Sequence record: NC_062581.1
Length of the DNA: 64,000 nucleotides
Direction: 5' to 3' (one strand)
Both the position numbers and the translations under genes were made by a program. The notes below the pieces were generated by a model, which searched no databases, was not told where the DNA came from, and was given only the letters and a program-made list of their open reading frames with translations. Positions 4,112 to 54,667 of this stretch are shown piece after piece; the stretch's first letter is position 1, and each line of letters opens with the position of its first letter.

Positions 4112-5847
4112 ATGATCACATTAGTTGTTGGATGCATTTTACTAGCAATGGGTATCATTGGTGGTGGATTCCTATTATGGGCGTGCATTACCAATTACAT
4201 CGAGAAAGATGATCAGCTCAATTATTGTTTCGGTGCACTGATTAGTTACCTAGTGCTACTTATGGTAATGGTTGCTATTGCCATGGCTGAAAAACAATAC
4301 CTGATGAACAACTGAGGTTAACATGCAAAGTAATCTAATTGTAGCAACTGTCTACCCAATCACTGGTTGTGATAGTGTTGGGTATGTTCGTGAAATCAAA
4401 CAAGACGAAAATGGTAAGTATTCTTTTGTCCGTACAAACTCCGTTGAACGTGCACAGTTGTTCGGCGCGGAAGTTAATGCGGTAATTGATTGGATGCGTA
4501 AGGAATGCCATTACGATGGCCTGGACACAATCTATTCATTTAGCCCATTTCCAGTTAACAACCTAACCCGTATGGTGGAAGTTAGTACTCTTTCAGAACA
4601 AGCCGAGGCAAATGATGTTCAGGCGTGAATTAACCATTAGTGAACGTTGCAGTTTGATTAACCTGCGCAACGATACACGCATGACCGGGCGGCGTTCCAA
4701 CGAAGAATTTATCACTCCGGAATCACTGTGTAAGTTTCATGATCGCACTGTGGCTGAAATGACTACTTTGTTGGATACCAAGAAAGCCCCTACGCATACG
4801 ACTAATCCATACCCATTGGTTGAAGTAGTTGAGTGGCTGGCTAACCAAAACAAATCGTTAGATGCTGCCATTGTTACTGACGATTTGAATTTTAGTTCTA
4901 CTACACATGGGTATCTGGAATTTTTTCTAGACAAAGCTTTGCAGGGGGAAATACAACGAGTTAAAAATACCACCATTCGTTTAGATTTTCCAAAACAAGA
5001 TGCCCCGACTACGACCATGCATCTTTATGAAAACGATATGTTGATCCGTCGTCCAAAAGACGCTACGACGTATGTATACTTCTGTGCCATACAACCAGTA
5101 ATTGACAAAGAGACTGTACACGATGCAGATTCAGATTGATTTAGCTACTAAACGTCCAGGTTATAAAGAAGCATTGGACGCGTTCATAGAACGAAATAAA
5201 GTTCATGGTACTTTGGTAGAGTGGGGCAATCCACCTATGGGTGCCTACAACACACCTGACCGTAAACTGTGGCGCATGAGTCAAGTAAACCCCGGACAAG
5301 TCTGTGCTGAACTTGTAGAGCCTGAGTTTGATGCATCTACCGGTATATTTACCTTTCAAGTAGCACCTTACGGTCCGCGTCGGGATATGTTTGAAAAGTA
5401 TGTTAAGGAACAAAAAGATTTGGCCCTTAATAGTCGTATGACTGTAGATGGAATGAACGAAGTTGTAGAGCTTCTACAATACAGTCTTGTTCCTATTGCT
5501 GAACAAGATGACATGGTCCTACAATCCACACGTAAAGTTAAAAAGAGTAGCAAATGAAAAAGAAAGATTGGATTGCTGAACTGGGTAAAAACGTAATCAT
5601 TGGGGCCTGTTTTGTTTGGTGGTTTATTATTCGTTGGTTTGAACCACGTGAAAACTACAAAACTTTTGCGTTGTATCTGACTGCACGCCCTAACATGGGT
5701 TATGCTACACGGAAACTGTTAGAACAATTTAAAGCAACATTAAAACCTGATGATGTAGTACGTGTTATTCAATCGCCAGGTTGGTATCCAGATAGTACCA
5801 CATGGACTTTTTCTTATAAAGACGTAACTTGGAAAATAACAGAGTAA
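4112..5847 (+). other. Block of 5 hypothetical genes
   Basis: Abutting or overlapping ORFs 4112-4315 (2 TM), 4323-4628, 4612-5139, ~5123-5557, 5554-5847. Confidence 0.7.
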
Positions 5848-5915
5848 GATAATACTCGTATGGTTTATTGATTGCGGTGAGATTGCCGCTTTCAATATCC
5901 TACGAGGTCGTTACA

Positions 5916-7256
5916 ATGTCTGAAGCAGAAGTTGTACAAAAAGAAATCAAAGCAGGTTTTGGTGTAGTAGAAAAAGATCGTAAACTTGCGCGCATCGTTA
6001 TCATTGACGATGTTGTTCCACACCCTAATGCTGAACGCTTGGAACTTGCTGTAATTGGTGGTTGGCAACTCTGTGTCAAATTGGGCGAATACAAGAAAGG
6101 TGATCGTGCCGTTTATTGCGAGATCGATTCCCTGCTACCATTGTCCAACGTAGAACTCTTTGGTTTCCTGGAAGAACGCCGTTCTGATAACCGTCGGGTT
6201 GATGGTGTTAACTTTCACCGGCTGAAGACTATCAAACTGCGTAAAGAAATTTCACAAGGTCTGTTGGTTCCAGTGCCAGCTAAGTTTAAAGATTCTCCGG
6301 TTGATACTAACCTGACTCTAGAACTGGGTATCTTGAAATACGAACCACGTGCACCAATGGAGCCATCGAACAAAGAAGCTCGCGGTTCTGACTGGTACTC
6401 TCGTTTGATTCGTAAGATCATTGGTAACCTGGATGGTTCACTGATTCCTTGGCCAGCTCAACTGACTAAGTCTGATCAGGACCGAGTACAGAACAAAACT
6501 GTTGCCTTCACCCTGGCTAAAGAAGCCGGTGAAGTATTTGAAGTTACCTACAAGCTTGATGGTAGCTCGATGACTGTGTTCTGCATCAACGATAAAGGTG
6601 TCCGTACTGGTGTGTGTTCTCGTAATTACGAGCTAGGTCTGGGTGAAGGTAATTGGTCGTTCTCTGAACAGCTGCGTCATTGGGTTGGTGCTTTCCTCAT
6701 CCGTAACCGTAAAGTAGTTAGCTTGAAGAAAGTTCCTTTGGAAGAAGGTGGTTTCAAACGTAAACTACATTGGACTGGTATTCACATTCCACAGTGGTTG
6801 AAAGGTAGCATTGCTACTGAGAACAACTTCACTCGTTATGTGAAAGAACATGAAGTTACCAAGGCGCTGCGTGAATACCAAGCGCGTACTGGTGAATTCA
6901 TTACTGTTCAAGGTGAATTGATTGGTCCGGACATTCAGTCTAACTTTGAAGGTGTAGACAAACACGAATACCACGTGTTCTCTGTGTACCGTAATGGTAA
7001 CGAAGAAGTCTTGCCTGAAGAAGCTGAAAAGATTGTTAAAGAACTGGGTCTTACTTACGTTCCAATCTTTGATCGTGCGTTTGTAATCAAACCAGAACAA
7101 GGTGTTAAAGAAATCCTGGAATTGGCTGAAGGTCAACGTGCTTTCAATCCAAAGAAAGGTACTTACCGTGAAGGTCTGGTATTCAAGTCAAAATCTCGAC
7201 TGATGTCCTTCAAAGCCATCAGCAATAGCTACCTTATCAAAAAAGCAGACGAATAA
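5916..7256 (+). CDS. ATP-dependent RNA ligase (Rnl2/DRB0094-like) with N-terminal OB-fold tRNA-binding-like domain
   Basis: N-terminal HPNAERLELAVIGGWQ..VK.GEYKKGD.AVYCEIDS; ligase motifs KLDGSS, GELIGP.IQ, REGLVFK and FKAISNSYL; likely start MSEAE at 5916. Confidence 0.88.
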   Translation: MSEAEVVQKEIKAGFGVVEKDRKLARIVIIDDVVPHPNAERLELAVIGGWQLCVKLGEYKKGDRAVYCEIDSLLPLSNVELFGFLEERRSDNRRVDGVNFHRLKTIKLRKEISQGLLVPVPAKFKDSPVDTNLTLELGILKYEPRAPMEPSNKEARGSDWYSRLIRKIIGNLDGSLIPWPAQLTKSDQDRVQNKTVAFTLAKEAGEVFEVTYKLDGSSMTVFCINDKGVRTGVCSRNYELGLGEGNWSFSEQLRHWVGAFLIRNRKVVSLKKVPLEEGGFKRKLHWTGIHIPQWLKGSIATENNFTRYVKEHEVTKALREYQARTGEFITVQGELIGPDIQSNFEGVDKHEYHVFSVYRNGNEEVLPEEAEKIVKELGLTYVPIFDRAFVIKPEQGVKEILELAEGQRAFNPKKGTYREGLVFKSKSRLMSFKAISNSYLIKKADE

Positions 7257-9781: not shown

Positions 9782-12700
9782 ATGTCTAAACAAAAGCAAA
9801 CCCGTAAAGTTCTTGGTGAATTGCGCCTTTTACAACACCGCTTCTGCACTGTCAATCCACAACGGACACGCCGTGAACTGATTGATAGTCTGCAAACGTT
9901 TGTCAGTACCGATGGCATTGACATCATCGATGCCACAACGCGGCAAAAGATCGATCGCGTAACTTTCGACCAGAAGGTAGTGCCTGAGCATTACTATCCG
10001 GTCATCGCACACATTGCGGCGATTACTGCTCCGCAATAAATCCCGTGGCCCTCCGTAATAGGAGGGCATTATAAAAGGAAGTAGACATGTCACTTGCAGT
10101 TGTGTTTTTCTCCACCGTGATTGGTTTGTCTGAAGGCGTCAGCATTCCACCAGAGCCCAATCAAGAAAAGATTGAGTTTCGTGGAAGTAACGCCATGCAA
10201 GCTTGCCGTTCTTTTGAGAACGCTTTTCATACTAAACAACCAACCACGTACGGCATGCGTAAGGTTTCTATTGATACCTACGGCGTCGGGCAAGTACAAC
10301 GTGAAAGCTATTGTGTAACAACTGAACAGGGTTAATAATAATGCGTACACAAGTAGAAATCTGGGAAGATGAACGTCGTAGTTTGGAAATAGCTCTGATC
10401 AGAGCAACGCTCCAGCAGCTGTGGAATCAAGACTACGAACCAGGTCTGCTAACAATGAATGGCGTGGTTCATCTGGTAGAGCATAAAGTGGACACCAGTA
10501 TGGGCAGAAATCAGACAACTGGCCATAAGGAATTCACGCTGGATGTTCTTGAATCTACAAAGTTTAAACTGGATGCACCTCTTTGGACGATCGTATTTGA
10601 CGTCGAGGACAACAAGGTTTCGGAATTGGTTATTGATACCATACTCTGCAAACGTAAAACCATCATCCATGAACTGGGTGAATATGTGTTGCATATCCTC
10701 AGCACATATCATCCCGATGGCCGGAAACTGTTTGAAAATTAAGTGTTGACACAAGGAGAGACTACGGGTAAACTATAGTCTCAATCAAAACGGAAGGGAA
10801 ACATAATGAAGTACGAAGATCTACTGCATCTGTCATCGCAAGTTCGGGTGTCTTATCTGGTAGCTGTCCTCAAAGCAGTTTGTGTCGAGGCGAAGGAATC
10901 GCCAAAGCCCCTAGCAACAGTTATAAATGCAACATTGGCAGTGTTTAGCTTGACTGCCACCGAACACGATGCGTTGAAACAAGAAGCATTAGAACGCCTA
11001 CAAGACGAATAATTGGACTGAGCCTCGCAAGGGGCTCAACTCTCAAGGAAAACAAAATGATTGAAGCACTATTGAACTTTCCATGGAAAATCCAATTGGG
11101 TTTAATATGGATTGTGTTGACTCTATTGGGTGTGTGGCTGGCTAACAACATGCTCAATGATGCATGGCGTAATAAAACCTGGTGTATGTTTATTGGGTGT
11201 TTTAACATCTTTGCCTTGTTGTTGAATCTGTTGTCTGCAACCGTAATGATTGTGGATTATAGCCAAGAACAATATCAAGATGAACTGTTTACTCAGGAAT
11301 TGCAACGTGAGAGTATTCCGTATTGAAGATGTTTACGGGAATGGTATCTACGCTGTTGAAATGGGATATGAAATGTCATTGGCTGCTGGCCTAGACGAAT
11401 ACTTTCCTTTTGAAGGTCATTCTAATCAACCCGTTCCAAGTGAAGATGGTCTTACCCGTGGTGATGAAGCATGGGGGAAATACTACGGGTTTGCTGGTAT
11501 CCCGCAACTGTTAAATTGGATTAACGGTTGTCCTGTAGAAAGGCTGTATGAAAAAGGTGGGCTTGTAATCCAACTCGATGTTAAAAAAGCAGAGTTTGGT
11601 TATAACCAATGTCGGTTTGCTGAAACCGATATCATTTCGCGTAAACCATTGAAGTTGTACGATCTACAGAGGATTCTATAAATGGCGATGTATTCTGGTC
11701 TACGGTTGGACCTTAAGTTGAAATCTGAAACCCCACCACAAATCATCGTGTGGTTGTCTAAGCATGCAATGCATGAAGGTAACATTCCAGAGATCAATAG
11801 TTTCTTTTCTTACGGGGTTACTTACTTTCCAGATTGGAAAGGTGGTTCACTAAAACGTATTGACGAAGGTGATGGTTATTGGCACCTGAAATCGAATGGT
11901 GTAAGTTCTGGTTACGATGACACTAAAATTGCTTTCTTCCTGCATGAAATCCAACCGTGGTTGATTTTAGAAGAAGGACAAATTCTGGCGTCTATTATCT
12001 ACGAAGAACGTGAAGCAGTTGAACGTATCTTCTGGATTGACCCCAAAGACACTTTGGTGCGCCGCCGTCGAGCTACAGTGTATTGTTACGAAGATGATCA
12101 TCCTCGTGATTGGAATGCATTAGAACTAGCTGAACCACTGGGTTTTGAATCTGCAGCAAACCGACCTAATTGGTTGGATGAAGAAATATTCAACTTTGCA
12201 TGCAATGCGGTGGTAAGTCCAGCACAAGAAGAAAAACGTATCCTGGCTAAACAGCATAATGAAAAATATGCAGCAGGCAGCGTAGAAGCAATTCAAGAAG
12301 AACTTAAAGCATTGGAAGGGAAGCAATGAATATTCATTCGTGGCGTGATGGGCGTTTTATTCTGGCAAAGGATTCACTGCTGGCGATGGCTGCTCGATTA
12401 GGTTTTATGTCTATTGATCAGATCAATGAACTGCCCATTGCCAGTGACGTGGGGTTGCACGATGGCTGGTGTGTTGATATCCACGCTAGTAAAGGTATTG
12501 GTGGACGTATTCGCCATACACTTGACATCAACATTTGGAATGACATTGAAGATTGTCAATGGAAGTTTACCATTGACGTGTTGGGTCAGAATCAATGTAA
12601 AAACTGTTACTTTCCAGAAATTGGAAACTTCGGTAAAGATGTAGATACATTGTCAGAAAATGATTTCAATGACATTTGTTATTTGCCGGAAGTCTTTGCA

Positions 12701-40791: not shown

Positions 40792-42348
40792 TTACTTTCC
40801 TACAGAACGCAACCAACGATCAATCAATTCATTGGTCTTAGCTTTGTATTTCAGGTATTTCAAAAACAGTTCTTCAGCACGTGGGTGCTCACGAACAATC
40901 ATGAAACCATGTGTTACACGCAGGTAATCTTCTGCACCAATAACAATGGATGGATCTTCCAGAGCAATAGCAATGTCTTCCAACCGATCAAGGTTTTGAA
41001 GAGCAGTCCATGCATCTTCCACATCAGCGTAGATTGTTTTTGGGATAGCGCTTTGGCTGATGTGGTACAGTGTAAAAGGACCTTCGTGTTTAGTAACTAC
41101 AATTGCTTCACCGTCACCAAAACGATCCAACCAACGTTCGTTGTTAATAGCCAGGTCAGTGTAGTACTTAGCTACGGATGGCATGGTTTCTTCTAGCAAC
41201 GCTTGTAGACCATCATTAAGATGCTGAAAAATACGGAAACCATTACTAACAAATGATTCTGGATTAAATTCAGGATCGGTAGTGTCAACGTAAAGCAATG
41301 CCAGTTGCTTACCTTCCGGCAGATCACGTTCAAATAGGTACGCATGCTTACGTGATTCAGGATCAGCCAGATTATGCTTAGCAATAGACATTGCCAGTTG
41401 TGGTGCTTGTTCCTGAATTGCTTCTCTGACGAGATCTACGGTAGTTTCCGGATCAGGATCGGCGGGATCAATTGTGAGTTCGACGTCTTTTGGAAAATCT
41501 TCCTGATATCGTTTTACAATATCCTCGGTCACTAGGTAATTAAGTTTAGCTTTAATTACAATATCCGCATCTGGATATTTTCTTTTGAAGTGATCTACAA
41601 TCAGTTCTGGGTTAGTTTCGTCTTTATCCAGTTCTAGTTTCAGAGTCACTTTGCGAGGTGGAACATACAGTTCAGCAGTAGCAATACCTTCTTGCGAACC
41701 AACATCATCAAATGGATCACAGTCAGGATCTTCACCGTATTCCGGTTCATCTCCACTGTCGTATTCTTGCTCATCAGTGTCCGTATCCACCGCTTCATCT
41801 GGATCACCCAGTGGGCGATGACGATCGGTGTGCCATCGAGATTCTACACCAGTGATAACAATCTTACTACCAGCTGGAGGTAATGACAATCCACGTTCTT
41901 CGTGGGTCAATGTAGTGTCGGCAATATTAAGTGCAGTATCGTAACCACCACCAACCAAAAACAAAGGCAAGCGACGCGCCAGTGCTTCAGCGCCAGAATT
42001 TGCCTGGAAACCAGTTACGGTAATATGCAAGGTGTTTTCTTCCACACCTACAATATCACCGGCTTTATCAACTACAAAATCAGCTGTAGTTTTTTCTTCT
42101 GGTTTAATTACATCAGCATATTCGCTTTGCTTAGTAATGTCGTATTTGAACAGATGCGACATCAGTCGAGCAGCGGCAATGTTAGCTTGTTGACGTGTAA
42201 TACCAGTAGCATCCATGATAGGCATGGCCAGGTTACATTGCCAACCCCACGCGTAACCTTCATCATCACGAATCGCAGCTTTAAGGCGATCAAATGCTTC
42301 ACCTGTGGTAATAGTGTATTCTACAGCTTTTGTAATTTCGGTGCTCAT
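40792..42348 (-). CDS. Hypothetical multidomain protein with acidic linker
   Basis: 518 aa; D/E-rich central segment; N-terminal GYAWGWQCNLAM. Confidence 0.8.
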   Translation of the reverse strand: MSTEITKAVEYTITTGEAFDRLKAAIRDDEGYAWGWQCNLAMPIMDATGITRQQANIAAARLMSHLFKYDITKQSEYADVIKPEEKTTADFVVDKAGDIVGVEENTLHITVTGFQANSGAEALARRLPLFLVGGGYDTALNIADTTLTHEERGLSLPPAGSKIVITGVESRWHTDRHRPLGDPDEAVDTDTDEQEYDSGDEPEYGEDPDCDPFDDVGSQEGIATAELYVPPRKVTLKLELDKDETNPELIVDHFKRKYPDADIVIKAKLNYLVTEDIVKRYQEDFPKDVELTIDPADPDPETTVDLVREAIQEQAPQLAMSIAKHNLADPESRKHAYLFERDLPEGKQLALLYVDTTDPEFNPESFVSNGFRIFQHLNDGLQALLEETMPSVAKYYTDLAINNERWLDRFGDGEAIVVTKHEGPFTLYHISQSAIPKTIYADVEDAWTALQNLDRLEDIAIALEDPSIVIGAEDYLRVTHGFMIVREHPRAEELFLKYLKYKAKTNELIDRWLRSVGK

Positions 42349-43616
42349 GCAGTTACCTGTTCATTGGATTGATATTCACGAGAAGCACGAAGACGAACCT
42401 TGGCTTCAGTTGTAGTTTCAGTGACCCACACAGTCATGCAACCATTTTGATATTGGGCATTGACTGTAAATTTCAGTTCTGGAAATTTATCTACTAGTTG
42501 TTGTGTAATGTGTTCTGATACAACTGCATCGGCATTACCCAGGATAGCTTCCGTACCTAGGAAAACATCTTCCAGCGCTTTGGTTGCTACTGTAGTGATT
42601 TCAATAATCTTACTGACATTACGTGAACGTTTCTTTTGTTCTTCCGTACGTACAGGGAAAAGATCATTGACCACATTGTCATTTGGCACTGGTGCACCTA
42701 TAGTCATTTCGGTACGAGTAAAACCTAGATCATGAACAACTTCTTCATCACTGAGAGTATCCTCTACTACAATGGTGAATGTCCAATCCCGACCAATAGC
42801 AGCGGTTACGTTTACTTGGAAGTTTTCATTCTCGTAACGCTCAACCAAACGTTCTTTAATACGGATGTTAGCTGCGCAGATCATTTCATGGGTGTTCAGT
42901 TTAGAATCACCCAGTAGTTCATTAAATACTTCAGCAGCAATCTTCTTTACTTGTTTTGCAAAAACACTTTCTGTTTGGGACATTGTATCACCTTCAAAAC
43001 GGGTAAGTGGTGCTTGTACCACTTCTACATAACAATGGTCAGGTGAGTTATAAATTGCACCCTGTACATTAAACATCAATGGCGCACCCAGTTCGTAGTC
43101 GGAATAATACACCGAAACCGTAGTGTGATTTTCAGGGTAGACCATTTTTACTTGATCACGAATATCTTCTTCTACAAACAGACGAAGTTCTTCTGCCGTA
43201 GAGATAGCGTTGTTGCTAACATCAGCAACAACTTCTTTGGTAACGTTAATCAAGAACTCTTTGAAATCGGTAAACAACGGAATGAGTTCTTCCACTGGTA
43301 AAGTTTGTACCGATTTGACAATCTGGAATTGATCAATATCACGATTAAGCTTTTCACAAACTTTAACCATGTACTGTTCTACATCAGAACCCTTAACCAA
43401 AGTAACGGTAACGGTATGGTAATAGGTACCTAGCTCGTGGGTATCGGGAGTCCATTTGTAATCCGTTGCTAACTTGGCTTCTAACTTAGTAGCAAGTTCC
43501 AGGTTAATGCGACCCACAATGTAAACATACTTCTGCGCATGGGTCAGATAAACTTGGCTGGTCACATCCTGCAAGTGCTTTAATACGGTTTCTTCTACTT
43601 GTTTGATTGTGTCCAT
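42345..43616 (-). CDS. Hypothetical protein
   Basis: 423-aa ORF coupled to rtcB. Confidence 0.8.
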   Translation of the reverse strand: MDTIKQVEETVLKHLQDVTSQVYLTHAQKYVYIVGRINLELATKLEAKLATDYKWTPDTHELGTYYHTVTVTLVKGSDVEQYMVKVCEKLNRDIDQFQIVKSVQTLPVEELIPLFTDFKEFLINVTKEVVADVSNNAISTAEELRLFVEEDIRDQVKMVYPENHTTVSVYYSDYELGAPLMFNVQGAIYNSPDHCYVEVVQAPLTRFEGDTMSQTESVFAKQVKKIAAEVFNELLGDSKLNTHEMICAANIRIKERLVERYENENFQVNVTAAIGRDWTFTIVVEDTLSDEEVVHDLGFTRTEMTIGAPVPNDNVVNDLFPVRTEEQKKRSRNVSKIIEITTVATKALEDVFLGTEAILGNADAVVSEHITQQLVDKFPELKFTVNAQYQNGCMTVWVTETTTEAKVRLRASREYQSNEQVTA

Positions 43617-43617
43617 A

Positions 43618-44880
43618 TTAACCTTTCACACAGAGGAATTGTTTTAGGGTGTGCACGATTTCAACCAGTTCAGATTGTGCCGCCATTACGTCATCAATGT
43701 TCTTGTATGCCTTAGGGGTTTCATCCAGAACACTTGCATCTTTACGACATTCTACACCAGCTGTATCACGGATATGATCTTCCAGTGTAAAAGTCTTTTC
43801 TGCTTGTGTACGGGACATTACTCGACCTGCACCATGTGAACATGAACAGAACGATTCTCGGTTTCCTTTACCGCGGACAATGAATGACTTAGCACCCATA
43901 GAACCTGGAATGATCCCCAGTGTTCCTTCACTTGCGTTGACTGCACCTTTACGTGTTACAATAACATTCTCACCAAAGTGGCGTTCTTGTGATACGTAGT
44001 TGTGGTGGCAGTTAATTGCCTCTAGATCCGAATCAATTGGCAGGCCCAGTGTTTTGTGGATGGCATCCAAAGCAGCGTGCATCATCACGGAACGATTTAG
44101 TGCAGCAAAGCGTTGTGCCCAAGATACGGCTTCAACGTAGTCATCGTAGTAACGTGAACCTTCCGGCAGATAAGAAAGATCTTTATCCGGAAGGTGGATA
44201 AAGAAACGCCCCATTTCTTCTTTGGCTTTGCTAATGAAGTAAGTACCAATAGCGTTACCAATACCACGCGAACCCGAGTGTAGCATAATCCATACACGAT
44301 CTGTTTCATCAAGACACAGTTCAATGAAGTGGTTACCCGTACCCAGTGTCCCTACATGGTTCCAAGCACGCTCGGATGCTTTCTTCAATTTAGGGTGGCG
44401 TTCAACAATGCTATCCAATTGCTTCCGTAGTTTTGCAGCTTCTTCACGAACAGCTACGGTTGGGTGATTGAAGATATTAACGGTACCAAATGCACCACGA
44501 TCATTCTTACCACCATTGTCAGTACGACCATGTGGCACACATGCTTCAATGGCTGCACGAAGATGTCCCAGAGAGTCTGGAAGCGCGTCTGAAGAGAATC
44601 TCAGACGTTGTGCTGCCATTCCGCATCCAATATCAACACCTACCGCAGAAGGGATGATAGCGCCTTTGGTAGCAATAACAGAACCAATGGTTGCACCTTT
44701 ACCCACATGAACGTCTGGCATCACTGCTACGTGGGAATAAATGAATGGCAATGCTGCAATGTTTTTCAATTGCTTTACTGCATCGGGTTCTACTGGTACA
44801 CCTACGGTCCAGCCTTTAATTGGCTTAGCTCCGTCAATAGGCTCACCACCTAGAATTTCAAATGTTTTACTCTGTTTCAT
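43618..44880 (-). CDS. rtcB: RtcB RNA-splicing/repair ligase
   Basis: MPDVHVGKGATIG, VGVDIGCG, GTLGTGNHF, LHSGSRG, HHNY, IPGSMG, SCSHGAGR and DETPKAYK motifs. Confidence 0.96.
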   Translation of the reverse strand: MKQSKTFEILGGEPIDGAKPIKGWTVGVPVEPDAVKQLKNIAALPFIYSHVAVMPDVHVGKGATIGSVIATKGAIIPSAVGVDIGCGMAAQRLRFSSDALPDSLGHLRAAIEACVPHGRTDNGGKNDRGAFGTVNIFNHPTVAVREEAAKLRKQLDSIVERHPKLKKASERAWNHVGTLGTGNHFIELCLDETDRVWIMLHSGSRGIGNAIGTYFISKAKEEMGRFFIHLPDKDLSYLPEGSRYYDDYVEAVSWAQRFAALNRSVMMHAALDAIHKTLGLPIDSDLEAINCHHNYVSQERHFGENVIVTRKGAVNASEGTLGIIPGSMGAKSFIVRGKGNRESFCSCSHGAGRVMSRTQAEKTFTLEDHIRDTAGVECRKDASVLDETPKAYKNIDDVMAAQSELVEIVHTLKQFLCVKG

Positions 44881-44908: not shown

Positions 44909-45574
44909 TTATTGATTAACGAATGTTTCACAATGCCCTTTTGGATCAAGCACAATATTACCTGTCCAAGTAAAACCTTTTTGTTCTTCTGTTTCAACGT
45001 TTGCTACTGCGCTGATTACAATTTGCCTTACTTCGCCATTTTTAATACTAGCAAAGTCTTTAGGAAACAAATGATCCCGAACTGCATTCAATACAACGTC
45101 GCCTTGAGTGGTTGTTGTAGGGACAGTAACAAATGCACTTAGTGCACGATCAACTTCGTTGTCTAGCAGACGCCACTGGACGTACGGGTGCAAGTGTCTG
45201 ATGCTATCCCCGTCCATGTAATCCAAATGGGCTGAATGTTTATCGATCAAACGGTCTTGAAAAAGATCTGCTGTCTTGGTATACAGTTCAGGGTGGTCAC
45301 GGAACAGCGAGTTTGTACAGTAAGTATTTTCTACAGTAGAAACGGGCTCAAGTTTTTCTAATGTTTCCCGGTAACACTCTTCCAACAGCATGAAGTAATT
45401 CTTACGCACAGGTCCCCAAATGTCCTCACGAATGATTTCGCGCAGGGCTGCAAATTCAGTAAGTTCCTTAAGGTTAACGCTACGGTTTGCACAGTGTAGT
45501 TCGTGCAAGCGTTCTTTAAATCCTTCTTGTAGCAAAGGAGCGAAGGGCTCCATAAATTTATCAAGTGCTGACAT
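44909..45574 (-). CDS. Hypothetical protein
   Basis: 221-aa ORF. Confidence 0.75.
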   Translation of the reverse strand: MSALDKFMEPFAPLLQEGFKERLHELHCANRSVNLKELTEFAALREIIREDIWGPVRKNYFMLLEECYRETLEKLEPVSTVENTYCTNSLFRDHPELYTKTADLFQDRLIDKHSAHLDYMDGDSIRHLHPYVQWRLLDNEVDRALSAFVTVPTTTTQGDVVLNAVRDHLFPKDFASIKNGEVRQIVISAVANVETEEQKGFTWTGNIVLDPKGHCETFVNQ

Positions 45575-48129: not shown

Positions 48130-48133
48130 TTGT

Positions 48134-48958: not shown

Positions 48959-49044
48959 TGGTGCCTGAAGGGGGACTCGAACCCACCAATCCCGAAGGCG
49001 GGAGTGTTTAAGACTCCTATCTATACCAATTCGATCATTCAGGC
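48959..49044 (-). tRNA. tRNA-Leu(TAA)
   Basis: GCCTGAA/TTCAGGC acceptor, GGAGT-CTTAAAC-ACTCC, long variable arm, CCA. Confidence 0.93.
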
Positions 49045-49050
49045 GTATAC

Positions 49051-49089
49051 TTTCTAGAATGGTGTGTCTACCGATTTCACCATCCGGGC
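49051..49089 (-). pseudogene. tRNA-Leu-like 5' half only
   Basis: GCCCGGATGGTGAAATCGGTAGACACA (acceptor 5' strand plus D arm); no anticodon-stem partner, T arm or 3' strand. Confidence 0.65.
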
Positions 49090-49094
49090 TAATT

Positions 49095-49860
49095 TGATCC
49101 AGCATCCAAAACGTACAGGTTTGGTTAACAACAAACACAAGGTCGTTGGTAGATCGGTCGCTGGAAGAACCTTTTCATCCTAGTACATAGCCACAACGAA
49201 CTGCGGTAAACCGCTAGAGTTGTAACCGGCGAGCTAGGTCTATCTACTTACTCGCCTACAGCGCTTCAGGACGATGGAGGGCAAGTAATTGAGAATCGAG
49301 GGTAACCAATTAGACGCTTTGCTAGCTCCGGCTTTCACGGAGTGCCGACTAACCCATTACCATGACCAGTAGGCAGACTGGGTAGCTGGGACACAAGGTC
49401 CAGTTCGGGAATATGGGGTTGCGTGTAAGAAATCAGCCAGGGATCTGAAACATGTTTTCTTACACCAACCAGTGACGGACATCTGATCCGTTGCAGCCGA
49501 GTCTGCCGCCTCTTCGGTATGCGCCTTAGTAACCGGGACTATCCAGTCTTTGGGGTATCATGGGTCGGGCTTTGAGCTTCCCTGTTAACTGACTATTCTA
49601 GTCTTTTGTCAGTCGTCGTAGGGGTTCATTAAAATCTCACACCATGCAGCTCGGTGCCCTAGTCTGAGGATTAATCAGGCATCAGTGTAAGACTTGCCTA
49701 TCCCTTCCGGGCTAGGGCTTCACCGTTCCAATGGGCTCGGTGTATGAGATTGATAGTAACGATTTAACGCTCCTTGGCAGCTTTCCCAATTCACGCAACC
49801 TTTACCGAACGTTAGAGGAAACCTCCTTACCCAACATCCGAACTATCTATCTCATGCTCT
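49095..49860 (-). ncRNA. Large (~770 nt) structured non-coding RNA of unknown class
   Basis: No ORF >=60 aa; GC-richer than flanks; many long stems (10 bp 49423-49432/49456-49465; 8 bp 49372-49379/49500-49507; 7 bp 49633-49639/49745-49751). Confidence 0.7.
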
Positions 49861-49863
49861 TGA

Positions 49864-50538
49864 CTACTCGTGAGTAGTTTCTAAACTGTGTATTACGCAA
49901 ACTGAACCATCGTCTAACGCGGTCTTGGCGTTGTAATCAATTTGATTATAGACACCACCATGAAATTGGAAGATTCGATCACGCCAAGTACTATCCAGCT
50001 TTAAAGCAGGACAATCAGATTTACGACCTTCGCACAGAGCGTTGATTGTTACTGAACCTGCTTTAGTTACGTGGAGAGTAATCTTGAACGGCACACCTAG
50101 TGGTACGTTTTCCAAAACAGTAAAGTTATTGATTACTGGATCGGTAAAGCTACTACGGAAACCAGCCGTAAGTTTTCCTTTATTCCAGAAAACTTTCAAT
50201 GGTGGAGTAGTAGCATTTTTAACGTGTACTTGAGCAACTACCACTTTCTTAGCTGAGTTAACTCGAACTAATGTCATCTCTTGTCGAGACCAGTGATGTG
50301 CGGCACTATCCATAGGCCAGTAGTTTGCTTCTTTCCATTCACACCGCGTACGATGTGTACTTTTACTAGATGCACCTAATGTTGGTGCTGAGAGTTGTAT
50401 CGAACCGTCTTCTAATTGACTGATCACATCCGCACACTTCACCAAGGCCTCTGAACCAATTAATTCCCAAGCAACAGGATTATTGATACTGACCGGTAAG
50501 GGAGTGGCTATTAAGTAATGATTAATGTCAACTAACAT
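49864..50538 (-). CDS. Polysaccharide lyase family 7 (alginate lyase)
   Basis: PL7 motifs RTRCEWKE, VVAQVH and FHGGVYNQ. Confidence 0.85.
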   Translation of the reverse strand: MLVDINHYLIATPLPVSINNPVAWELIGSEALVKCADVISQLEDGSIQLSAPTLGASSKSTHRTRCEWKEANYWPMDSAAHHWSRQEMTLVRVNSAKKVVVAQVHVKNATTPPLKVFWNKGKLTAGFRSSFTDPVINNFTVLENVPLGVPFKITLHVTKAGSVTINALCEGRKSDCPALKLDSTWRDRIFQFHGGVYNQIDYNAKTALDDGSVCVIHSLETTHE

Positions 50539-50561
50539 TTCTTTACTCTCTTTTAATAGGT

Positions 50562-50622
50562 GGAGCGTCCTAGTCTAACTAGACGACAGCTAATGCTGAT
50601 TGGATTTGCACCAATGTACTCC
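50562..50622 (-). ncRNA. Circularly permuted tRNA-like RNA (unit B, degenerate)
   Basis: GGAG-TAC-[ATTGG TGCAAAT CCAAT]-[CAGC ATTA GCTG]-TC-[GTCT...GGAC]-G-CTCC. Confidence 0.55.
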
Positions 50623-50628
50623 GGGTAC

Positions 50629-50697
50629 GAGAGTGTCCTTGGCCACTAGACGAACTACCCTAATGGATAGTAACGGGGTCGAACCGTTGTTTCTCTC
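50629..50697 (-). ncRNA. Circularly permuted tRNA-like RNA (unit A)
   Basis: GAGAG-AAAC-[AACGG TTCGACC CCGTT]-[ACTATCC ATTA GGGTAGT]-TC-[GTCT AGTGGCCAA GGAC]-A-CTCTC; all four stems pair in the permuted register. Confidence 0.8.
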
Positions 50698-50703
50698 TAT
50701 CAC

Positions 50704-50795
50704 TGGAGGAAGAATAGGGATTTGAACCCTAGGGCAGTCCTTAGACCACCAGAGCTTTAGCAAAGCCCCTCGTTAAACCACTCCGACATTCTTCC
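50704..50795 (-). tRNA. tRNA-Ser(GCT)
   Basis: GGAAGAA/TTCTTCC, GGGCT-TTGCTAA-AGCTC, long variable arm, CCA. Confidence 0.93.
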
Positions 50796-50801
50796 TGTAA
50801 T

Positions 50802-50877
50802 TGGCGGGCTATGATGGACTCGAACCACCAACACGCGGCTTTGGAGGCCGCTGTTCTGCCAATTGAACTAATAACCC
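50802..50877 (-). tRNA. tRNA-Trp(CCA)
   Basis: GCGGC-CTCCAAA-GCCGC; canonical 76-nt cloverleaf with CCA. Confidence 0.95.
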
Positions 50878-50989
50878 TAAACCTGTACGGGTTTGATTTA
50901 ACTGAGCTAACCGTGATCCTCAGTCCCTTCGCTAACCTTTGGGAAAAGTTAGCTTACGCTTGATTGGAGACTTAACGACAGTCTCTCGT

Positions 50990-51011
50990 ATACTATTACA
51001 CAACCAGTATT
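50990..51011 (-). promoter_or_regulatory. Bipartite phage promoter
   Basis: AATACT-GGTTGT-GTAATAGTAT. Confidence 0.8.
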
Positions 51012-51017
51012 TTATTT

Positions 51018-51725
51018 TTAGAAAGGCACGTAAGTGTACGATCTAGAATACCTAGCAAAATCACTAATCCGAATTCGTCCATGGTAGCCGGTAACTGCCG
51101 GAGTAGAACTGGCTTCAAATCCTAAACGTAGTCGCGTTATATTAGCCAAGCTATCTTGCGGAGTAAATGATTGTAGATTATAAACCGTTGTTGTTCCACG
51201 AGCCAAAGATTGTTGTAGGCCATTACAGAATATTTTGATTTGGCCATCTTTACATACCAGAGCGTAATGATTCAATACGTTGGTAGCATTTGCTTTGGTA
51301 ATAGCCGGAGCCCAAGTATTGTTAGCTACTCCAAATGAAGTACCAAAATGTAACCTGTTTTGGAATCCTTGATCACCATACCGTGATAACACACCTGTAC
51401 CAGCCGTAGAACTTAACAAACTAAATTCATGTGCATAACTAGCTGCTGCTGTGGTGTTTTTAGACGACCATTCCACAGTCCAGTTTTTGCCCTGCAGATT
51501 TAAAGGGATAGCAAATGTAATAAGTAGTCCAGCAGACGTACTAGGAAAAGACAAAGAACTACGTCCATCAATAGGGTTAGCTGCGTCAGCTACCGCTCCT
51601 CCCGATAAAACGATTGTGGGGTTAGTACCCATCAACTCCGTATTGGTTACAGGGTCATATAAAAAGATAACGTTACCGGTGTCTTCCGGGGGCGATTCTA
51701 ACAGCCCCAATAAAGATTCAAGCAT
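51018..51725 (-). CDS. LamG/concanavalin-A-like lectin domain protein (probable tail-associated)
   Basis: WTVEW, NHYALVCKDGQIKIFCNG and GYHGRIRISDFARY beta-sandwich motifs. Confidence 0.7.
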   Translation of the reverse strand: MLESLLGLLESPPEDTGNVIFLYDPVTNTELMGTNPTIVLSGGAVADAANPIDGRSSLSFPSTSAGLLITFAIPLNLQGKNWTVEWSSKNTTAAASYAHEFSLLSSTAGTGVLSRYGDQGFQNRLHFGTSFGVANNTWAPAITKANATNVLNHYALVCKDGQIKIFCNGLQQSLARGTTTVYNLQSFTPQDSLANITRLRLGFEASSTPAVTGYHGRIRISDFARYSRSYTYVPF

Positions 51726-51766
51726 GGGATAATTCCAAATAGTAAATACACACTATTGGGACATAA

Positions 51767-51786
51767 AGCCAACCCGCAGGCTGGCT
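51767..51786 (-). terminator. Intrinsic terminator
   Basis: AGCCAGCC-TGCG-GGTTGGCT followed by TTATG. Confidence 0.8.
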
Positions 51787-51789
51787 ATG

Positions 51790-51981
51790 TTAGTCATGTC
51801 GAATTCCGTAATCAATTACTTTATTCATTTGTTCTTGAGTGGGGATTCTGTTGCGGGCTCGTTCAGCACATTCGATATCAAATTGTTTAATTCTAGCCTG
51901 CCATTCTTTTATTTGTTTTGGTGTCAGTTGGATTGGCTTTATGTTACCATTGGCTAAATCAATCAGTTTCTTTAGGCTCAT
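51790..51981 (-). CDS. Small helical paralog 1
   Basis: MSLKKLIDLA...IPTQEQMNKVIDY. Confidence 0.7.
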   Translation of the reverse strand: MSLKKLIDLANGNIKPIQLTPKQIKEWQARIKQFDIECAERARNRIPTQEQMNKVIDYGIRHD

Positions 51982-53797: not shown

Positions 53798-53835
53798 ACG
53801 TATCGGCAATGACTCTACCAACTGAGCTATTTACC
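53798..53835 (-). pseudogene. tRNA-like 5' half only
   Basis: GGTAAATAGCTCAGTTGGTAGAGTC (D arm) without T arm or 3' strand. Confidence 0.55.
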
Positions 53836-53858
53836 AATGTATCGACAGTTCTTCATGT

Positions 53859-54080: not shown

Positions 54081-54158
54081 AGCCCTCCTTAGATACCGAA
54101 TCTAAATCTCTCTATCCGTGGTATGGACAGAGCGCTTTACCGATTAAGCTAGGTGGGC
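54081..54158 (-). ncRNA. tRNA-like RNA with 8-bp anticodon stem, no CCA
   Basis: GCCCACC/GGAGGGC, GCTT-AATCGGTA-AAGC, CTCTGTCC-ATACCAC-GGATAGAG, TTAGA-TTCGGTA-TCTAA. Confidence 0.7.
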
Positions 54159-54165
54159 ATTGAAT

Positions 54166-54251
54166 TGGTGGATGAAGGAAGGAATTGAACCTCTAGGAGA
54201 ACCGGCGGGGTTACAGGCCGCTGACAGTAGCCATCTGTCTCTACATCATCC
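54166..54251 (-). tRNA. Non-canonical tRNA-Tyr(GTA)
   Basis: Loop CTGTAAC; 8-bp acceptor with one U-U pair; 5-bp D stem GACAG/CTGTC; A73 and CCA. Confidence 0.75.
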
Positions 54252-54562: not shown

Positions 54563-54667
54563 ATTGAGAGTAACGGCGCTTTAACCGATTAAGCTAACGG
54601 CCCTGTTGGATAGGCGGGCCTTCCGAGTCAAGGGATTTGAACCCAAGTACCTCCGTTACTCTCGAAT
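54563..54667 (-). ncRNA. Circularly permuted tRNA-like RNA, YrlA/Y-RNA-like (unit C)
   Basis: 11-bp outer stem GAGAGTAACGG/CCGTTACTCTC extended by ATT/AAT with bulged C; T-loop GGG-TTCAAAT-CCC; closed acceptor GGCCC/GGGCC; D arm GCTT-AATCGGTTA-AAGC. Confidence 0.8.

What the first reader, a model, noticed from the sequence alone, without database searches (positions are those of the whole stretch)
50562..50697. Two tandem circularly permuted tRNA-like genes, each with the acceptor stem closed by ATTA
Unit A (50629-50697): GAGAG/CTCTC anticodon stem forms the open ends, with T arm AACGG-TTCGACC-CCGTT, a 7-bp acceptor ACTATCC/GGGTAGT joined by ATTA, and a Glu/Asp-type D arm. Unit B (50562-50622) repeats the plan with GGAG/CTCC, ATTGG-TGCAAAT-CCAAT, CAGC-ATTA-GCTG and a degenerate D arm. 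Read linearly the region looks like a broken pseudo-tRNA, but in the permuted register all stems pair. Established: permuted tRNA genes are known from Cyanidioschyzon and Thermofilum, where they mature via a circular intermediate. Inference: these are either permuted precursors needing ligation (RtcB/Rnl2 present) or 'pre-nicked' decoys.
Basis: partly seen in the sequence, partly recalled or inferred. Interest (0 to 1): 0.9.

Follow-up and report, generated by a model that had tools for sequence, protein, structure and literature searches.

The report
Permuted tRNA-like RNAs in phage
Inside its tRNA gene cluster, the Pseudomonas jumbo phage Psa21 encodes small conserved RNAs that fold like a tRNA-Glu with its amino-acid end sealed by a loop and its anticodon loop missing, so they are tRNA look-alikes of the bacterial Y-RNA (YrlA) type, not broken or split tRNA genes.

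Summary
Unit A (50629-50697) and unit B (50562-50622) each read 3' tRNA half, 4-nt loop, 5' tRNA half. They lie between tRNA-Ser and an alginate-lyase gene of Pseudomonas phage Psa21. No linear tRNA is detectable there, yet un-permuted unit A is called a tRNA.

The units are not debris. Unit A is kept at the same locus in eight related jumbo-phage contigs and unit B in two, with compensatory changes. A wider Glu-type family (about 25 loci) occurs in phage and metagenome tRNA arrays. It was absent from 185,579 cellular genomes under the patterns used.

The acceptor stem is a closed hairpin. It is capped by ATTA, cUUCGg or GNRA loops, or lengthened to 9 bp. No anticodon loop can be rebuilt from the flanks. 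A ligation-dependent permuted tRNA is therefore not supported.

The layout (T arm, closed acceptor, D arm, closing stem) matches the tRNA-like domain of YrlA Y RNAs. Three family members sit beside Ro60-like genes, but Psa21 has no detectable Ro60 homologue and no Ro-binding motif.

A third such element, unit C (54566-54663), is conserved in two relatives, each with a different and perfectly paired closing stem.

Best reading: Ro-less, non-decoding tRNA mimics. Their binding partner is unknown.

The parts
50629..50697 (-). Unit A: permuted tRNA-Glu-like RNA. Closing stem GAGAG (50693-50697) / CTCTC (50629-50633); variable loop AAAC (50689-50692); T arm 50672-50688; closed acceptor hairpin ACTATCC-ATTA-GGGTAGT (50654-50671); U8C9 plus D arm 50635-50653.
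   Evidence: Orthologues at the same locus in L014, L015, L079, L150, L151, L152, L165. Covariation.
50623..50628 (-). Spacer GTACCC between units A and B (GCTTC in L151/L165).
50562..50622 (-). Unit B: diverged second unit. Closing stem GGAG/CTCC; T-like hairpin ATTGG-TGCAAAT-CCAAT; 4-bp hairpin CAGC-ATTA-GCTG; D arm remodelled into a 7-bp bulged hairpin GTCTAGT-TAG-ACTAgGAC. It lacks G18G19 and the T-loop UUC.
   Evidence: model hit 25.9 bits, E=3e-6. Conserved in L151 and L165 with the A-U to G-C change in the T stem compensated.
54566..54663 (-). Unit C: a third element of the same topology but another type. 11-bp closing stem GAGAGTAACGG/CCGTTACTCTC; T-like arm with loop TTCAAAT; hairpin GGCCC-12 nt-GGGCC; D arm AGCT-TAATCGGTTA-AAGC.
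   Evidence: z=-2.26. Homologues in RVTF4 (L003 about 10048-10127) and L015 (about 757-847) have an 82-92% identical core. Their closing stems are entirely different but perfectly paired: CATTGATAG/CTATCAATG and AAACTAGTCG/CGACTAGTTT.
50704..50795 (-). tRNA-Ser(GCU) with encoded CCA, 6 nt upstream of unit A.
50802..50877 (-). tRNA-Trp(CCA), first gene of the inferred transcription unit.
50988..51000 (-). Promoter-like repeat TGTAATAGTATAC upstream of tRNA-Trp. Other copies at 48132, 48900, 53857 and 54963 (minus strand) and 38230 (plus strand).
   Evidence: 6 matches against 0.06 expected. Also conserved upstream of tRNA-Trp in relatives. A promoter role is inferred.
49864..50538 (-). PSA21_405, polysaccharide lyase family 7 (alginate lyase). 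Its start codon is 23 nt downstream of unit B.
43618..44880 (-). RtcB RNA ligase, same strand, about 5.7 kb downstream. Context only; no link to the units was shown.
   Evidence: PF01139, E=4e-129.

Best explanation
Units A and B, and unit C 4 kb away, are genes for small non-decoding RNAs that mimic the body of a tRNA.

Anatomy. Unit A keeps every element needed for the L-shaped fold of a tRNA-Glu. These are U8, A14, G15/C48, G18G19, the T-loop UUCGA, the 3-bp D stem with U13.G22, and a 4-nt variable loop. Its acceptor stem is sealed by a short loop, and its ends meet in a 5-bp stem where the anticodon arm would be. It therefore has no anticodon and no chargeable 3' end. This is the topology of the tRNA-like domain of bacterial YrlA Y RNAs: T arm, closed acceptor stem-loop, D arm.

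Inferred steps. The units are co-transcribed with tRNA-Trp and tRNA-Ser from the repeated TGTAATAGTATAC promoter-like motif. They are released or trimmed by the enzymes that process the neighbouring tRNAs. They act by occupying a protein that recognises the tRNA body (elbow, acceptor/T helix, Glu-type D helix), as a decoy or scaffold. In some phages that partner is probably a Ro60-like protein. In Psa21, which has none, the partner is unknown; host or phage RNA-repair, quality-control or defence factors are candidates.

Origin, also inferred: loss of the outer halves from a tandem pair of tRNA-Glu genes.

Shown here: the structure, its conservation, its covariation, its restriction to phage sequences, and the absence of an anticodon. 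Not shown: expression, processing, or any partner.
For: - Structure in the sequence.
- Same-locus orthologues in a clade of related jumbo-phage contigs show compensated changes. The closing stem changes from GAGAG/CTCTC to GAGGG/CCCTC. Acceptor pair 4:69 changes from U-A to C-G while G3.U70 is kept. T-stem pair 2 is A-U, U.G or C-G. The unit B T stem changes from A-U to G-C.
- Across ten family members, 96.3% of cells are paired and 9 of 19 pairs change on both sides, including 4 of 5 pairs in the closing stem. 0 of 500 shuffles reach this, and slid registers pair only 32-51%.
- Acceptor caps are cUUCGg (L014, L079, L055, L148; L132 on a longer stem), GNRA (L133 GTAA, L149 GAAA), or stems of 8-9 bp (L015, L150, L151, L133). 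This fits a hairpin meant to stay closed.
- A signature at the base of the acceptor hairpin (ACU...RGU) picks out all permuted units and none of the 88 ordinary tRNA dimers.
- Two patterns found no permuted unit in genome contigs: 0 hits, and 4 hits that were all ordinary tRNA-Glu genes (three tandem pairs). They found 12 viral contigs and at least 15 metagenome loci, all but two (L163, L097) with tRNA genes in the stretch fetched.
- Ro60-like genes lie just downstream on the same strand in L162 (vWA_Ro60 plus a weak TROVE match), L163 (DUF2828/DUF7788) and L125. The L162 and L163 proteins both hit phrog_850.
- The YrlA topology, and its authors' warning about tRNA dimers as false positives, are in PMC4201824.
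- Unit C has three different, perfectly paired closing stems around a conserved core.
Against: - There are no expression data, so the RNA has not been seen.
- Psa21 has no detectable Ro60/DUF2828 homologue anywhere in its genome. This rests on tblastn and phmmer with two queries over all pieces, and on Pfam, PHROGs and PDB searches of the unknown proteins beside RtcB. The obvious partner is therefore missing.
- The Rfam YrlA model does not hit the units.
- The closing stem is only 4-5 bp in units A and B and has no Ro-binding motif.
- Part of the family-wide covariation could be inherited from different ancestral tRNA-Glu genes rather than selected in the permuted form. Within the orthologous clade only 3 pairs change on both sides.
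- The Psa21 tRNA region also holds obvious tRNA debris, so rearrangement products are common there.
- The family was collected with patterns that fix the T loop and the Glu-type D arm. Conservation of those parts is partly by construction.
Confidence: 0.55

Rival explanations
1. Circularly permuted tRNA-Glu genes. The transcript would be opened at the acceptor loop by RNase P and 3' trimming with CCA addition. Its ends would be joined by RtcB or an Rnl-type ligase to make a decoding tRNA.
For: The 3' half precedes the 5' half, and all four stems pair. Un-permuted unit A is called a tRNA. RtcB and an RNA-ligase-family protein are encoded in the window. No ordinary tRNA-Glu is found in Psa21. 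M. smegmatis YrlA, with a 7-bp acceptor, is cut by RNase P and receives CCA (PMC4201824).
Against: No anticodon loop is available. The 5' flanks (..AUA..GUC..GAGC) and 3' flanks (GCUUAU, GUACCC, GCGUUU, CCUUCAC) vary and never yield YU-UUC-RN. Acceptor stems of 8-9 bp and cUUCGg or GNRA caps do not fit a 7-bp stem plus discriminator. Unit B has a 4-bp acceptor and no elbow nucleotides, yet is conserved. Units coexist with canonical tRNA-Glu genes in L112, L133 and L027.
Confidence: 0.07
2. Neutral rearrangement debris: leftovers of tandem tRNA-Glu genes in a tRNA cluster churned by homing endonucleases, with no function of their own.
For: Tandem tRNA-Glu dimers are very common and give the same stems automatically; 88 of 120 pattern hits were ordinary tRNA dimers, and they score about 60 bits on the model. 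The Psa21 cluster contains HNH endonuclease genes. It also contains clear fragments: a tRNA-Asn 5' half, a degenerate tRNA-Tyr and an odd tRNA called only by ARAGORN. D6 has a tRNA-Leu 5' half. D6 and RVTF4 lack units A and B.
Against: Unit A is kept at one locus across contigs whose neighbouring PL7 protein is only 74-76% identical, with compensated substitutions and exact truncation at both ends of the closing stem. Structured tetraloops were acquired independently. The unusual loops of unit B are conserved in L151 and L165. Unit C has three unrelated but perfect closing stems. No such remnants turned up in 185,579 cellular genomes with the family patterns.
Confidence: 0.1
3. A cis-acting element of the downstream mRNA. 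The tRNA-shaped fold at the 5' end of the PL7 message would act as a processing site (RNase P or RNase E 'punctuation') or as a 5' stabiliser.
For: In the Psa21 clade the unit always sits 20-24 nt before the PL7 start codon, next to the conserved AAGAGAG ribosome-binding region. The PL7 gene is embedded in tRNA arrays in many jumbo-phage contigs.
Against: In L055/L112, L148, L149 and L040 the unit is followed by another tRNA, not a coding gene, and in L163 and L125 by a Ro-like gene. More distant PL7 loci (L018, L022) have ordinary tRNAs upstream and no unit. A plain hairpin would be enough for 5' protection.
Confidence: 0.13
4. A canonical Y RNA that works only as the partner of a Ro60 protein. 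That protein would be a phage Ro60 too diverged to detect, or the host's Rsr.
For: The topology is that of YrlA. Ro-like genes lie next to family members in L162, L163 and L125. There is a weak Rfam YrlA hit beside the unit in L162 (25.6 bits, E=0.16). RtcB is nearby, as in the Salmonella rsr-yrlBA-rtcBA operon (PMC7790460, listed).
Against: There is no Ro-like homologue in the whole Psa21 genome by tblastn or phmmer. No annotated ORF within 4 kb is long enough to be one. There is no GNCGAAN0-1G motif and the closing stem is only 5 bp. Whether the host encodes Rsr was not tested.
Confidence: 0.15

Closest known systems
YrlA bacterial and phage Y RNAs (Rfam RF02553; Chen et al. 2014, PMC4201824)
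   Same: The order of elements is the same: variable region, T arm, acceptor-like stem closed by a loop, D arm, with the RNA's own ends forming the stem where the anticodon arm would be. The tRNA tertiary-contact nucleotides are kept. Multiple copies occur in tandem. Some members sit next to Ro60-like genes, and RtcB is in the neighbourhood.
   Different: No GNCGAAN0-1G Ro-binding motif. The closing stem is only 4-5 bp in units A and B. The Psa21 genome has no Ro60/TROVE/DUF2828 gene. The units sit inside tRNA arrays. The D arm and variable loop are clearly Glu-type. The Rfam YrlA model does not detect them.
Circularly permuted tRNA genes of Cyanidioschyzon merolae and Thermofilum pendens (from general knowledge; review hits)
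   Same: The 3' half is encoded upstream of the 5' half, and the likely origin is a tandem duplication followed by loss of the outer halves.
   Different: Those genes keep a complete anticodon loop split between leader and trailer, plus a bulge-helix-bulge motif for the splicing endonuclease, and their linker is removed to free a 7-bp acceptor end. Here there is no anticodon, no such motif, and a structured or lengthened cap.
Ordinary tandem tRNA-Glu gene pairs
   Same: The stretch from the T arm of copy 1 to the D arm of copy 2 has the same stems and scores about 60 bits on the unit model. This is probably the evolutionary source.
   Different: In dimers both full tRNAs are called, the junction carries a discriminator (with or without CCA) and a spacer, and anticodon loops are present. 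The units lack the outer halves and carry a 3-4-nt cap plus the ACU...RGU signature.
Two-piece (permuted) tmRNA
   Same: A permuted gene order for a tRNA-like domain.
   Different: tmRNA has no D-arm cloverleaf core of this kind, has a tag reading frame and a free CCA end. ARAGORN finds no tmRNA here.

Membership tests
Canonical tRNA (Rfam RF00005 / ARAGORN) | Linear cloverleaf detectable by the tRNA covariance model or ARAGORN | tested here: not met
   No hit in 50539-50703 on either strand, even at E<=10. The linear reading A5'+B3' is not called.
Canonical tRNA (Rfam RF00005 / ARAGORN) | 7-nt anticodon loop with U33 and an anticodon | tested here: not met
   The closing stem is open-ended, and the flanks give no conserved loop.
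Canonical tRNA (Rfam RF00005 / ARAGORN) | Free acceptor end (discriminator, CCA encoded or addable) | tested here: not met
   The acceptor is closed by ATTA. In relatives it is closed by cUUCGg or GNRA loops or is an 8-9-bp stem.
Canonical tRNA (Rfam RF00005 / ARAGORN) | Conserved core nucleotides: U8, A14, G18G19, U54U55C56, G53-C61 | tested here: met
   Met for unit A (ARAGORN accepts the un-permuted form). Not met for unit B, which has T loop UGCAAAU and no GG in the D loop.
Circularly permuted tRNA genes (C. merolae / Thermofilum type) | 3' half encoded upstream of the 5' half of the same tRNA | tested here: met
Circularly permuted tRNA genes (C. merolae / Thermofilum type) | Leader and trailer together supply the anticodon loop and a processing motif that allows end joining | tested here: not met
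   Flanks were compared in 15 members. There is no conserved loop, no UUC, and no bulge-helix-bulge-like pairing.
Circularly permuted tRNA genes (C. merolae / Thermofilum type) | Removable linker that leaves a 7-bp acceptor stem with a discriminator | tested here: not met
   9-bp stems in L015, L150, L151 and L165; 8 bp in L133; 4 bp in unit B; tetraloop caps.
Circularly permuted tRNA genes (C. merolae / Thermofilum type) | Circular intermediate and mature decoding tRNA observed | not testable with these tools
   Needs RNA from infected cells.
YrlA Y RNA (RF02553) | tRNA-like domain in the order T arm, closed acceptor-like stem-loop, D arm | tested here: met
   Definition taken from PMC4201824.
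YrlA Y RNA (RF02553) | GNCGAAN0-1G (Ro-binding) motif near the 5' end | tested here: not met
   The 5' side reads CCAGUGAUAGAGAG, with no such motif in or beside units A and B.
YrlA Y RNA (RF02553) | Encoded within about 4 kb of a Ro60/TROVE gene on the same strand | tested here: not met
   No ORF of suitable size lies within 4 kb. No Ro-like homologue is found in the whole Psa21 genome. The feature is met for family members L162, L163 and L125.
YrlA Y RNA (RF02553) | Score at or above the Rfam gathering threshold (69 bits) | tested here: not met
   No YrlA hit on the window region at E<=10. Only a 25.6-bit hit on a neighbouring element in L162.
YrlA Y RNA (RF02553) | Bound by Ro60, and tRNA-type modifications present | not testable with these tools
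   Needs immunoprecipitation and modification mapping.
Two-piece tmRNA | Permuted tRNA-like domain together with a tag reading frame | tested here: not met
   ARAGORN (tRNA and tmRNA search) reports none in the window.

The most novel reading that the evidence does not exclude
A phage-specific, Ro-independent class of tRNA-Glu body mimics carried in the tRNA arrays of jumbo phages. They would work as counter-defence or repair-pathway RNAs. One possibility is that they soak up a host factor that senses or attacks tRNAs, while being uncleavable (no anticodon loop) and unchargeable (sealed acceptor). Another is that the phage RtcB seals them into small circles. Unit C would represent a second, independent family of the same design.
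Probability: 0.25. Interest if true: 0.85.

Novelty: new variant of a known kind. Interest (0 to 1): 0.7.

Why it matters
Phage tRNA clusters are normally read as lists of tRNA genes, and anything the tRNA finders miss is left blank. Psa21 has no annotation across 50539-50703.

This work shows that such gaps can hold conserved, structured tRNA look-alikes with the circularly permuted layout so far described for YrlA Y RNAs next to Ro60. Here the layout occurs without Ro60 and is clearly derived from tRNA-Glu.

If the RNAs are expressed, they give a tractable system for asking what the tRNA-like module of Y RNAs binds, a question left open in the YrlA paper read here (PMC4201824). They would also add a candidate RNA player to the tRNA-centred conflicts between phages and bacterial defences.

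Practically, the ACU...RGU signature and the model built here separate these units from tRNA dimers and could be used to annotate them.

Tried and rejected
- A linear pseudo-tRNA made of the 5' half of A and the 3' half of B. A weak BLAST match to phage tRNA-Glu genes spans this junction. The acceptor strands do not pair, and neither ARAGORN nor Rfam accepts it.
- My first collection pattern had one N too many and found nothing. The corrected narrow patterns found only chance matches in coding DNA plus Psa21.
- Anchoring on the neighbouring protein PSA21_408 found only Psa21 itself. Phage-collection homologues of the PL7 protein (41% identity, P. putida phages) have no tRNA context.
- The covariance model alone as a discriminator: rejected, because ordinary tandem tRNA-Glu pairs score about 60 bits.
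- Ro60 in Psa21. Pfam, PHROGs and PDB sequence searches of PSA21_394, 395 and 397 found nothing. BLASTP against the L163 Ro-like protein found nothing. Searches of the whole genome in pieces gave only a spurious hit inside the terminase gene.
- KVP40, which has a DUF2828 gene, shows no Glu-type unit within 3.5 kb of it.
- Unit C in IMG/VR by pattern: only Psa21 and an ordinary His-Met dimer. Homologues were then found by BLAST in loci already fetched.
- Literature searches for permuted tRNAs in phages, phage tRNA mimics or decoys, and stable RNAs of phage tRNA clusters found no description of this family. That library is incomplete.
- The sigma-70 promoter and terminator scan of 49000-51800 gave nothing above the shuffled background.
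Full report
WHERE THE WINDOW COMES FROM

The window is the last 64 kb of Pseudomonas phage Psa21 (MK552327.1, 305,260 bp, genus Tepukevirus). Window position x equals record position x + 241,260. Psa21 is annotated with PhuZ and split RNA-polymerase subunits.

All nine tRNA genes that ARAGORN finds in the genome lie in the window, on the minus strand. The finding lies in an unannotated gap. On one side is tRNA-Ser(GCU), 50704-50795, whose encoded CCA ends at 50704. On the other is the start codon (50538) of PSA21_405, a family-7 polysaccharide (alginate) lyase.

CHECKING THE OBSERVATION

On the minus strand the gap reads as follows:

CCA GTGATA [GAGAG AAAC AACGG TTCGACC CCGTT ACTATCC ATTA GGGTAGT TC GTC TAGTGGCCAAG GAC A CTCTC] GTACCC [GGAG TAC ATTGG TGCAAAT CCAAT CAGC ATTA GCTG TC GTCTAGTTAGACTAGGAC G CTCC] ACCTATTAAAAGAGAGTAAAGAAATG

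Each bracketed unit has this order:
- 3' strand of an anticodon-type stem;
- variable loop;
- T arm;
- 3' acceptor strand, a 4-nt loop, then the 5' acceptor strand;
- U8C9 and the D arm;
- 5' strand of the anticodon-type stem.

RNAfold gives exactly this permuted cloverleaf as the minimum-energy fold of each unit. The energies themselves are not unusual (z between -0.4 and -1.7).

ARAGORN and the Rfam tRNA model see nothing here on either strand, even at E<=10. If the halves of unit A are swapped and joined by any 7-nt loop, even NNNNNNN, ARAGORN calls a tRNA. Unit B, and the linear combination of A's 5' half with B's 3' half, are not called.

Unit A is close to bacterial and phage tRNA-Glu. 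It shares the D arm UCGUCUAGUGGCC.AGGAC and a 4-nt variable loop.

IS IT MORE THAN DEBRIS?

The two closest isolated relatives, phages D6 and RVTF4, have Trp-Ser followed by a 700-850-nt conserved non-coding stretch, and no units A or B. Compared with D6, Psa21 carries about 1 kb (units, PL7 gene and 175 nt) in place of about 230 nt of that stretch.

The region also contains obvious tRNA fragments, so debris was a serious possibility. The PL7 protein gave the way in. It has homologues of 60-76% identity on metagenomic contigs of 220-317 kb.

The contigs with the closest PL7 proteins (74-76% identity) carry a unit A orthologue in the same place, between tRNA-Trp and the PL7 start. These are L014, L015, L150, L151 and L152. 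L079, L165 and the duplicate L013 were found by DNA pattern. L151 and L165 also carry unit B.

Within this orthologous set:
- The closing stem is GAGAG/CTCTC or GAGGG/CCCTC.
- Acceptor pair 4:69 is U-A or C-G, while G3.U70 is kept.
- T-stem pair 2 is A-U, U.G or C-G, with two mismatched cases.
- The first pair of unit B's T stem is A-U or G-C, while its unusual T loop UGCAAAU and remodelled D hairpin are unchanged.
- Overall 98.7% of cells pair, against 32-51% in slid registers.

The cap on the acceptor changes from ATTA to cUUCGg (L014, L079, L152). In L015, L150, L151 and L165 the stem grows to 9 bp with a TTCC loop.

A WIDER FAMILY

A pattern that fixed only the variable loop, the T loop and the Glu-type D arm was scanned over metagenome contigs.

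Of those hits, 88 are ordinary tRNA dimers in which ARAGORN calls both genes. Eighteen have no tRNA call and show the permuted layout with no outer halves.

All permuted units share ACU at the 5' base and RGU at the 3' base of the acceptor hairpin. A pattern that requires this recovers every unit and none of the dimers.

That pattern has no match in one genome from each of 185,579 bacterial and archaeal species. A relaxed form gives four matches there, all ordinary tRNA-Glu genes, three of them tandem pairs. The same patterns give 5 and 12 viral contigs, including contigs of 371 and 392 kb.

In all but two of the loci checked (L163 and L097) the stretch fetched around the unit also holds tRNA genes. 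Some of these arrays also have canonical tRNA-Glu genes.

Caps include cUUCGg (five lineages, one of them on a lengthened stem), GUAA and GAAA (GNRA type), GCCA, a 3-nt loop, and longer inserts.

On an alignment of ten members:
- 96.3% of cells pair.
- 9 of 19 pairs change on both sides, including 4 of 5 pairs in the closing stem.
- No shuffle out of 500 reaches these values.

A covariance model built from that alignment scores unit B, which was not in the seed, at 25.9 bits (E=3e-6 in the window).

Two cautions apply. The same model gives about 60 bits to tandem tRNA-Glu genes. Family-wide covariation could partly be inherited from different ancestral tRNA-Glu genes. The within-clade changes and the caps are the cleaner evidence.

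A THIRD ELEMENT

The model's next hit in the window led to unit C (54566-54663, minus strand), between the small ORF PSA21_418 and tRNA-Asp. It consists of:
- an 11-bp closing stem GAGAGTAACGG/CCGTTACTCTC;
- a T-like arm;
- a 5-bp hairpin with a 12-nt loop;
- a D arm of a non-Glu type.

Its folding z-score is -2.26. RVTF4 and L015 carry the same core at 92% and 82% identity. Their closing stems have entirely different sequences, CATTGATAG/CTATCAATG and AAACTAGTCG/CGACTAGTTT, and each is perfectly paired. This is strong direct evidence that the closing helix is selected for.

WHAT IT IS NOT

It is not a permuted tRNA gene awaiting ligation.
- The flanks of the closing stem differ between members, and no anticodon loop or UUC anticodon can be composed from them.
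- Acceptor hairpins of 4, 8 and 9 bp, and caps of very stable tetraloops, do not fit a linker that must be removed to free a 7-bp acceptor end.
- The units coexist with normal tRNA-Glu genes elsewhere.

It is not a tmRNA, and no Rfam family reaches threshold on it.

WHAT IT RESEMBLES

The order of T arm, closed acceptor-like stem-loop and D arm, with the RNA's ends forming the remaining helix, is the published architecture of the tRNA-like domain of YrlA. YrlA is the Y RNA encoded next to Ro60 (Rsr) in many bacteria and 22 phages. Its authors noted that tRNA dimers are the typical false positive (PMC4201824).

The link is more than topological. Three family members have a Ro-like gene just downstream on the same strand:
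- L162: vWA_Ro60 plus a weak TROVE match, 1.9 kb away.
- L163: DUF2828/DUF7788, 0.6 kb away, with no tRNA genes in that locus.
- L125: a DUF2828-like ORF about 100 nt away.

The L162 and L163 proteins both match phrog_850, 'RNA-binding protein'. L162 also has a weak Rfam YrlA hit on a neighbouring element (25.6 bits).

MEMBERSHIP FAILS FOR PSA21

- There is no GNCGAAN0-1G motif.
- The closing stems of A and B are 4-5 bp.
- No ORF within 4 kb is large enough to be a Ro60.
- Neither Ro-like query finds a homologue in any piece of the Psa21 genome.
- The unknown proteins beside RtcB match nothing.

MOST LIKELY MECHANISM

The repeated motif TGTAATAGTATAC occurs six times in the window against 0.06 expected. 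Four copies sit just upstream of tRNA subclusters, and it is conserved upstream of tRNA-Trp in relatives. This suggests one transcript covering Trp, Ser, unit A, unit B and PL7. That is inferred, not shown.

Processing of the flanking tRNAs would leave the units as compact RNAs closed at both ends. Unit A keeps all the nucleotides needed for the tRNA L-shape and the Glu-type 'augmented D helix', but it can be neither charged nor read. It would therefore be an inert copy of the tRNA-Glu body.

I conclude that the units act by binding a protein that recognises that body, as decoy or scaffold. In Ro-encoding phages the likely partner is the Ro-like protein. In Psa21 the partner is unknown.

Unit B has lost the elbow nucleotides but is conserved, so it probably binds something different or works together with A. 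None of this was tested. Confidence that this is a real, selected RNA structure is high (about 0.85). Confidence in the mimic mechanism is moderate (0.55).

NOVELTY

Phage YrlA RNAs next to Ro60 are known. The following points appear undescribed in the literature I could search and are absent from Rfam 15:
- a Glu-type, Ro-less version embedded in the tRNA arrays of jumbo phages;
- a diagnostic signature for it;
- tetraloop-sealed acceptor stems;
- a second family (unit C) in the same cluster.

I rate it a new variant of a known kind.

Noticed in passing
L002 (phage D6) about 5295-6000 and L003 (RVTF4) about 5150-6000, minus strand; remnant in window 49483-49688: A 700-850-nt non-coding stretch between tRNA-Ser(GCU) and tRNA-Leu(UAA). 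A 353-nt segment is 87% identical between D6 and RVTF4. It has no Rfam match even at E<=1. Psa21 keeps only a 206-nt piece at 82% identity, with the 5' part replaced by units A/B and the PL7 gene. It could be a large structured RNA.
   Followed up: partly
window 38230 (+); 48132, 48900, 50988, 53857, 54963 (-): The repeat TGTAATAGTATAC (6 copies against 0.06 expected). Four copies sit just upstream of tRNA subclusters, and the motif is conserved in relatives, followed by a GAGAGACTG...TCTC hairpin. It is probably a phage promoter or leader.
   Followed up: partly
window 54081-54158 (-): A 'tRNA-Gly(ACC)' called only by ARAGORN, not by Rfam or GenBank. It has a 7-8-bp anticodon stem and an odd T arm. 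D6 annotates the counterpart as tRNA-OTHER. Its D arm is nearly identical to that of unit C.
   Followed up: no
window about 53822-53858 (-) and about 54163-54250 (-): Two tRNA remnants: a lone tRNA-Asn-like 5' half directly upstream of the 88-nt tRNA-Asn, and a degenerate tRNA-Tyr-like gene not called by either tool. D6 likewise has a lone tRNA-Leu 5' half (L002 about 5300-5335).
   Followed up: no
L097 2631-2761 (+): A nested arrangement in a low-GC metagenomic contig: the 5' half of a Glu-like tRNA, then a complete permuted unit, then the matching 3' half. The two tRNA-like bodies would be joined tail to tail with no anticodon loop. Rfam reads the whole as a 131-nt tRNA (35.5 bits).
   Followed up: partly
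L062, L095, L099/L125, L147, L159, L161, L164: A subtype of the family with a GCCG-N-(A/U/G)AAC junction and only a 3-bp inner stem. Five of them (L062, L147, L159, L161, L164) also show a 6-10-bp outer helix formed by distant flanks (for example TTCAACGGGC/GCCCGTTGAA in L164), giving RNAs of about 150 nt with a Y-RNA-like outline.
   Followed up: partly
L149 953-1026 (-) and L062 10191 (+): In two phage contigs, tRNAs with a CUA (amber-reading) anticodon lie near the unit: immediately downstream in L149 and about 150 nt downstream in L062.
   Followed up: no
window 49864-50538 (-) and loci L018-L026: The family-7 alginate lyase gene is widespread on metagenomic jumbo-phage contigs and repeatedly sits inside or beside tRNA clusters, an unusual place for a depolymerase-type gene.
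   Followed up: partly
window 40792-43616 (-) and 44909-45574 (-): Three proteins flanking RtcB on the same strand (PSA21_394, 518 aa; PSA21_395, 423 aa; PSA21_397, 221 aa) have no meaningful match in Pfam, PHROGs or PDB sequences. PSA21_397 was not searched against PDB. They are candidates for RNA-repair partners.
   Followed up: partly
L022-L025, upstream of the PL7 gene: ARAGORN calls unusual tRNAs there: a 77-nt 'tRNA-Ser(GCU)' and an 88-nt 'tRNA-Leu(CAG)' with the anticodon at position 28. These suggest non-canonical tRNAs in that phage lineage.
   Followed up: no
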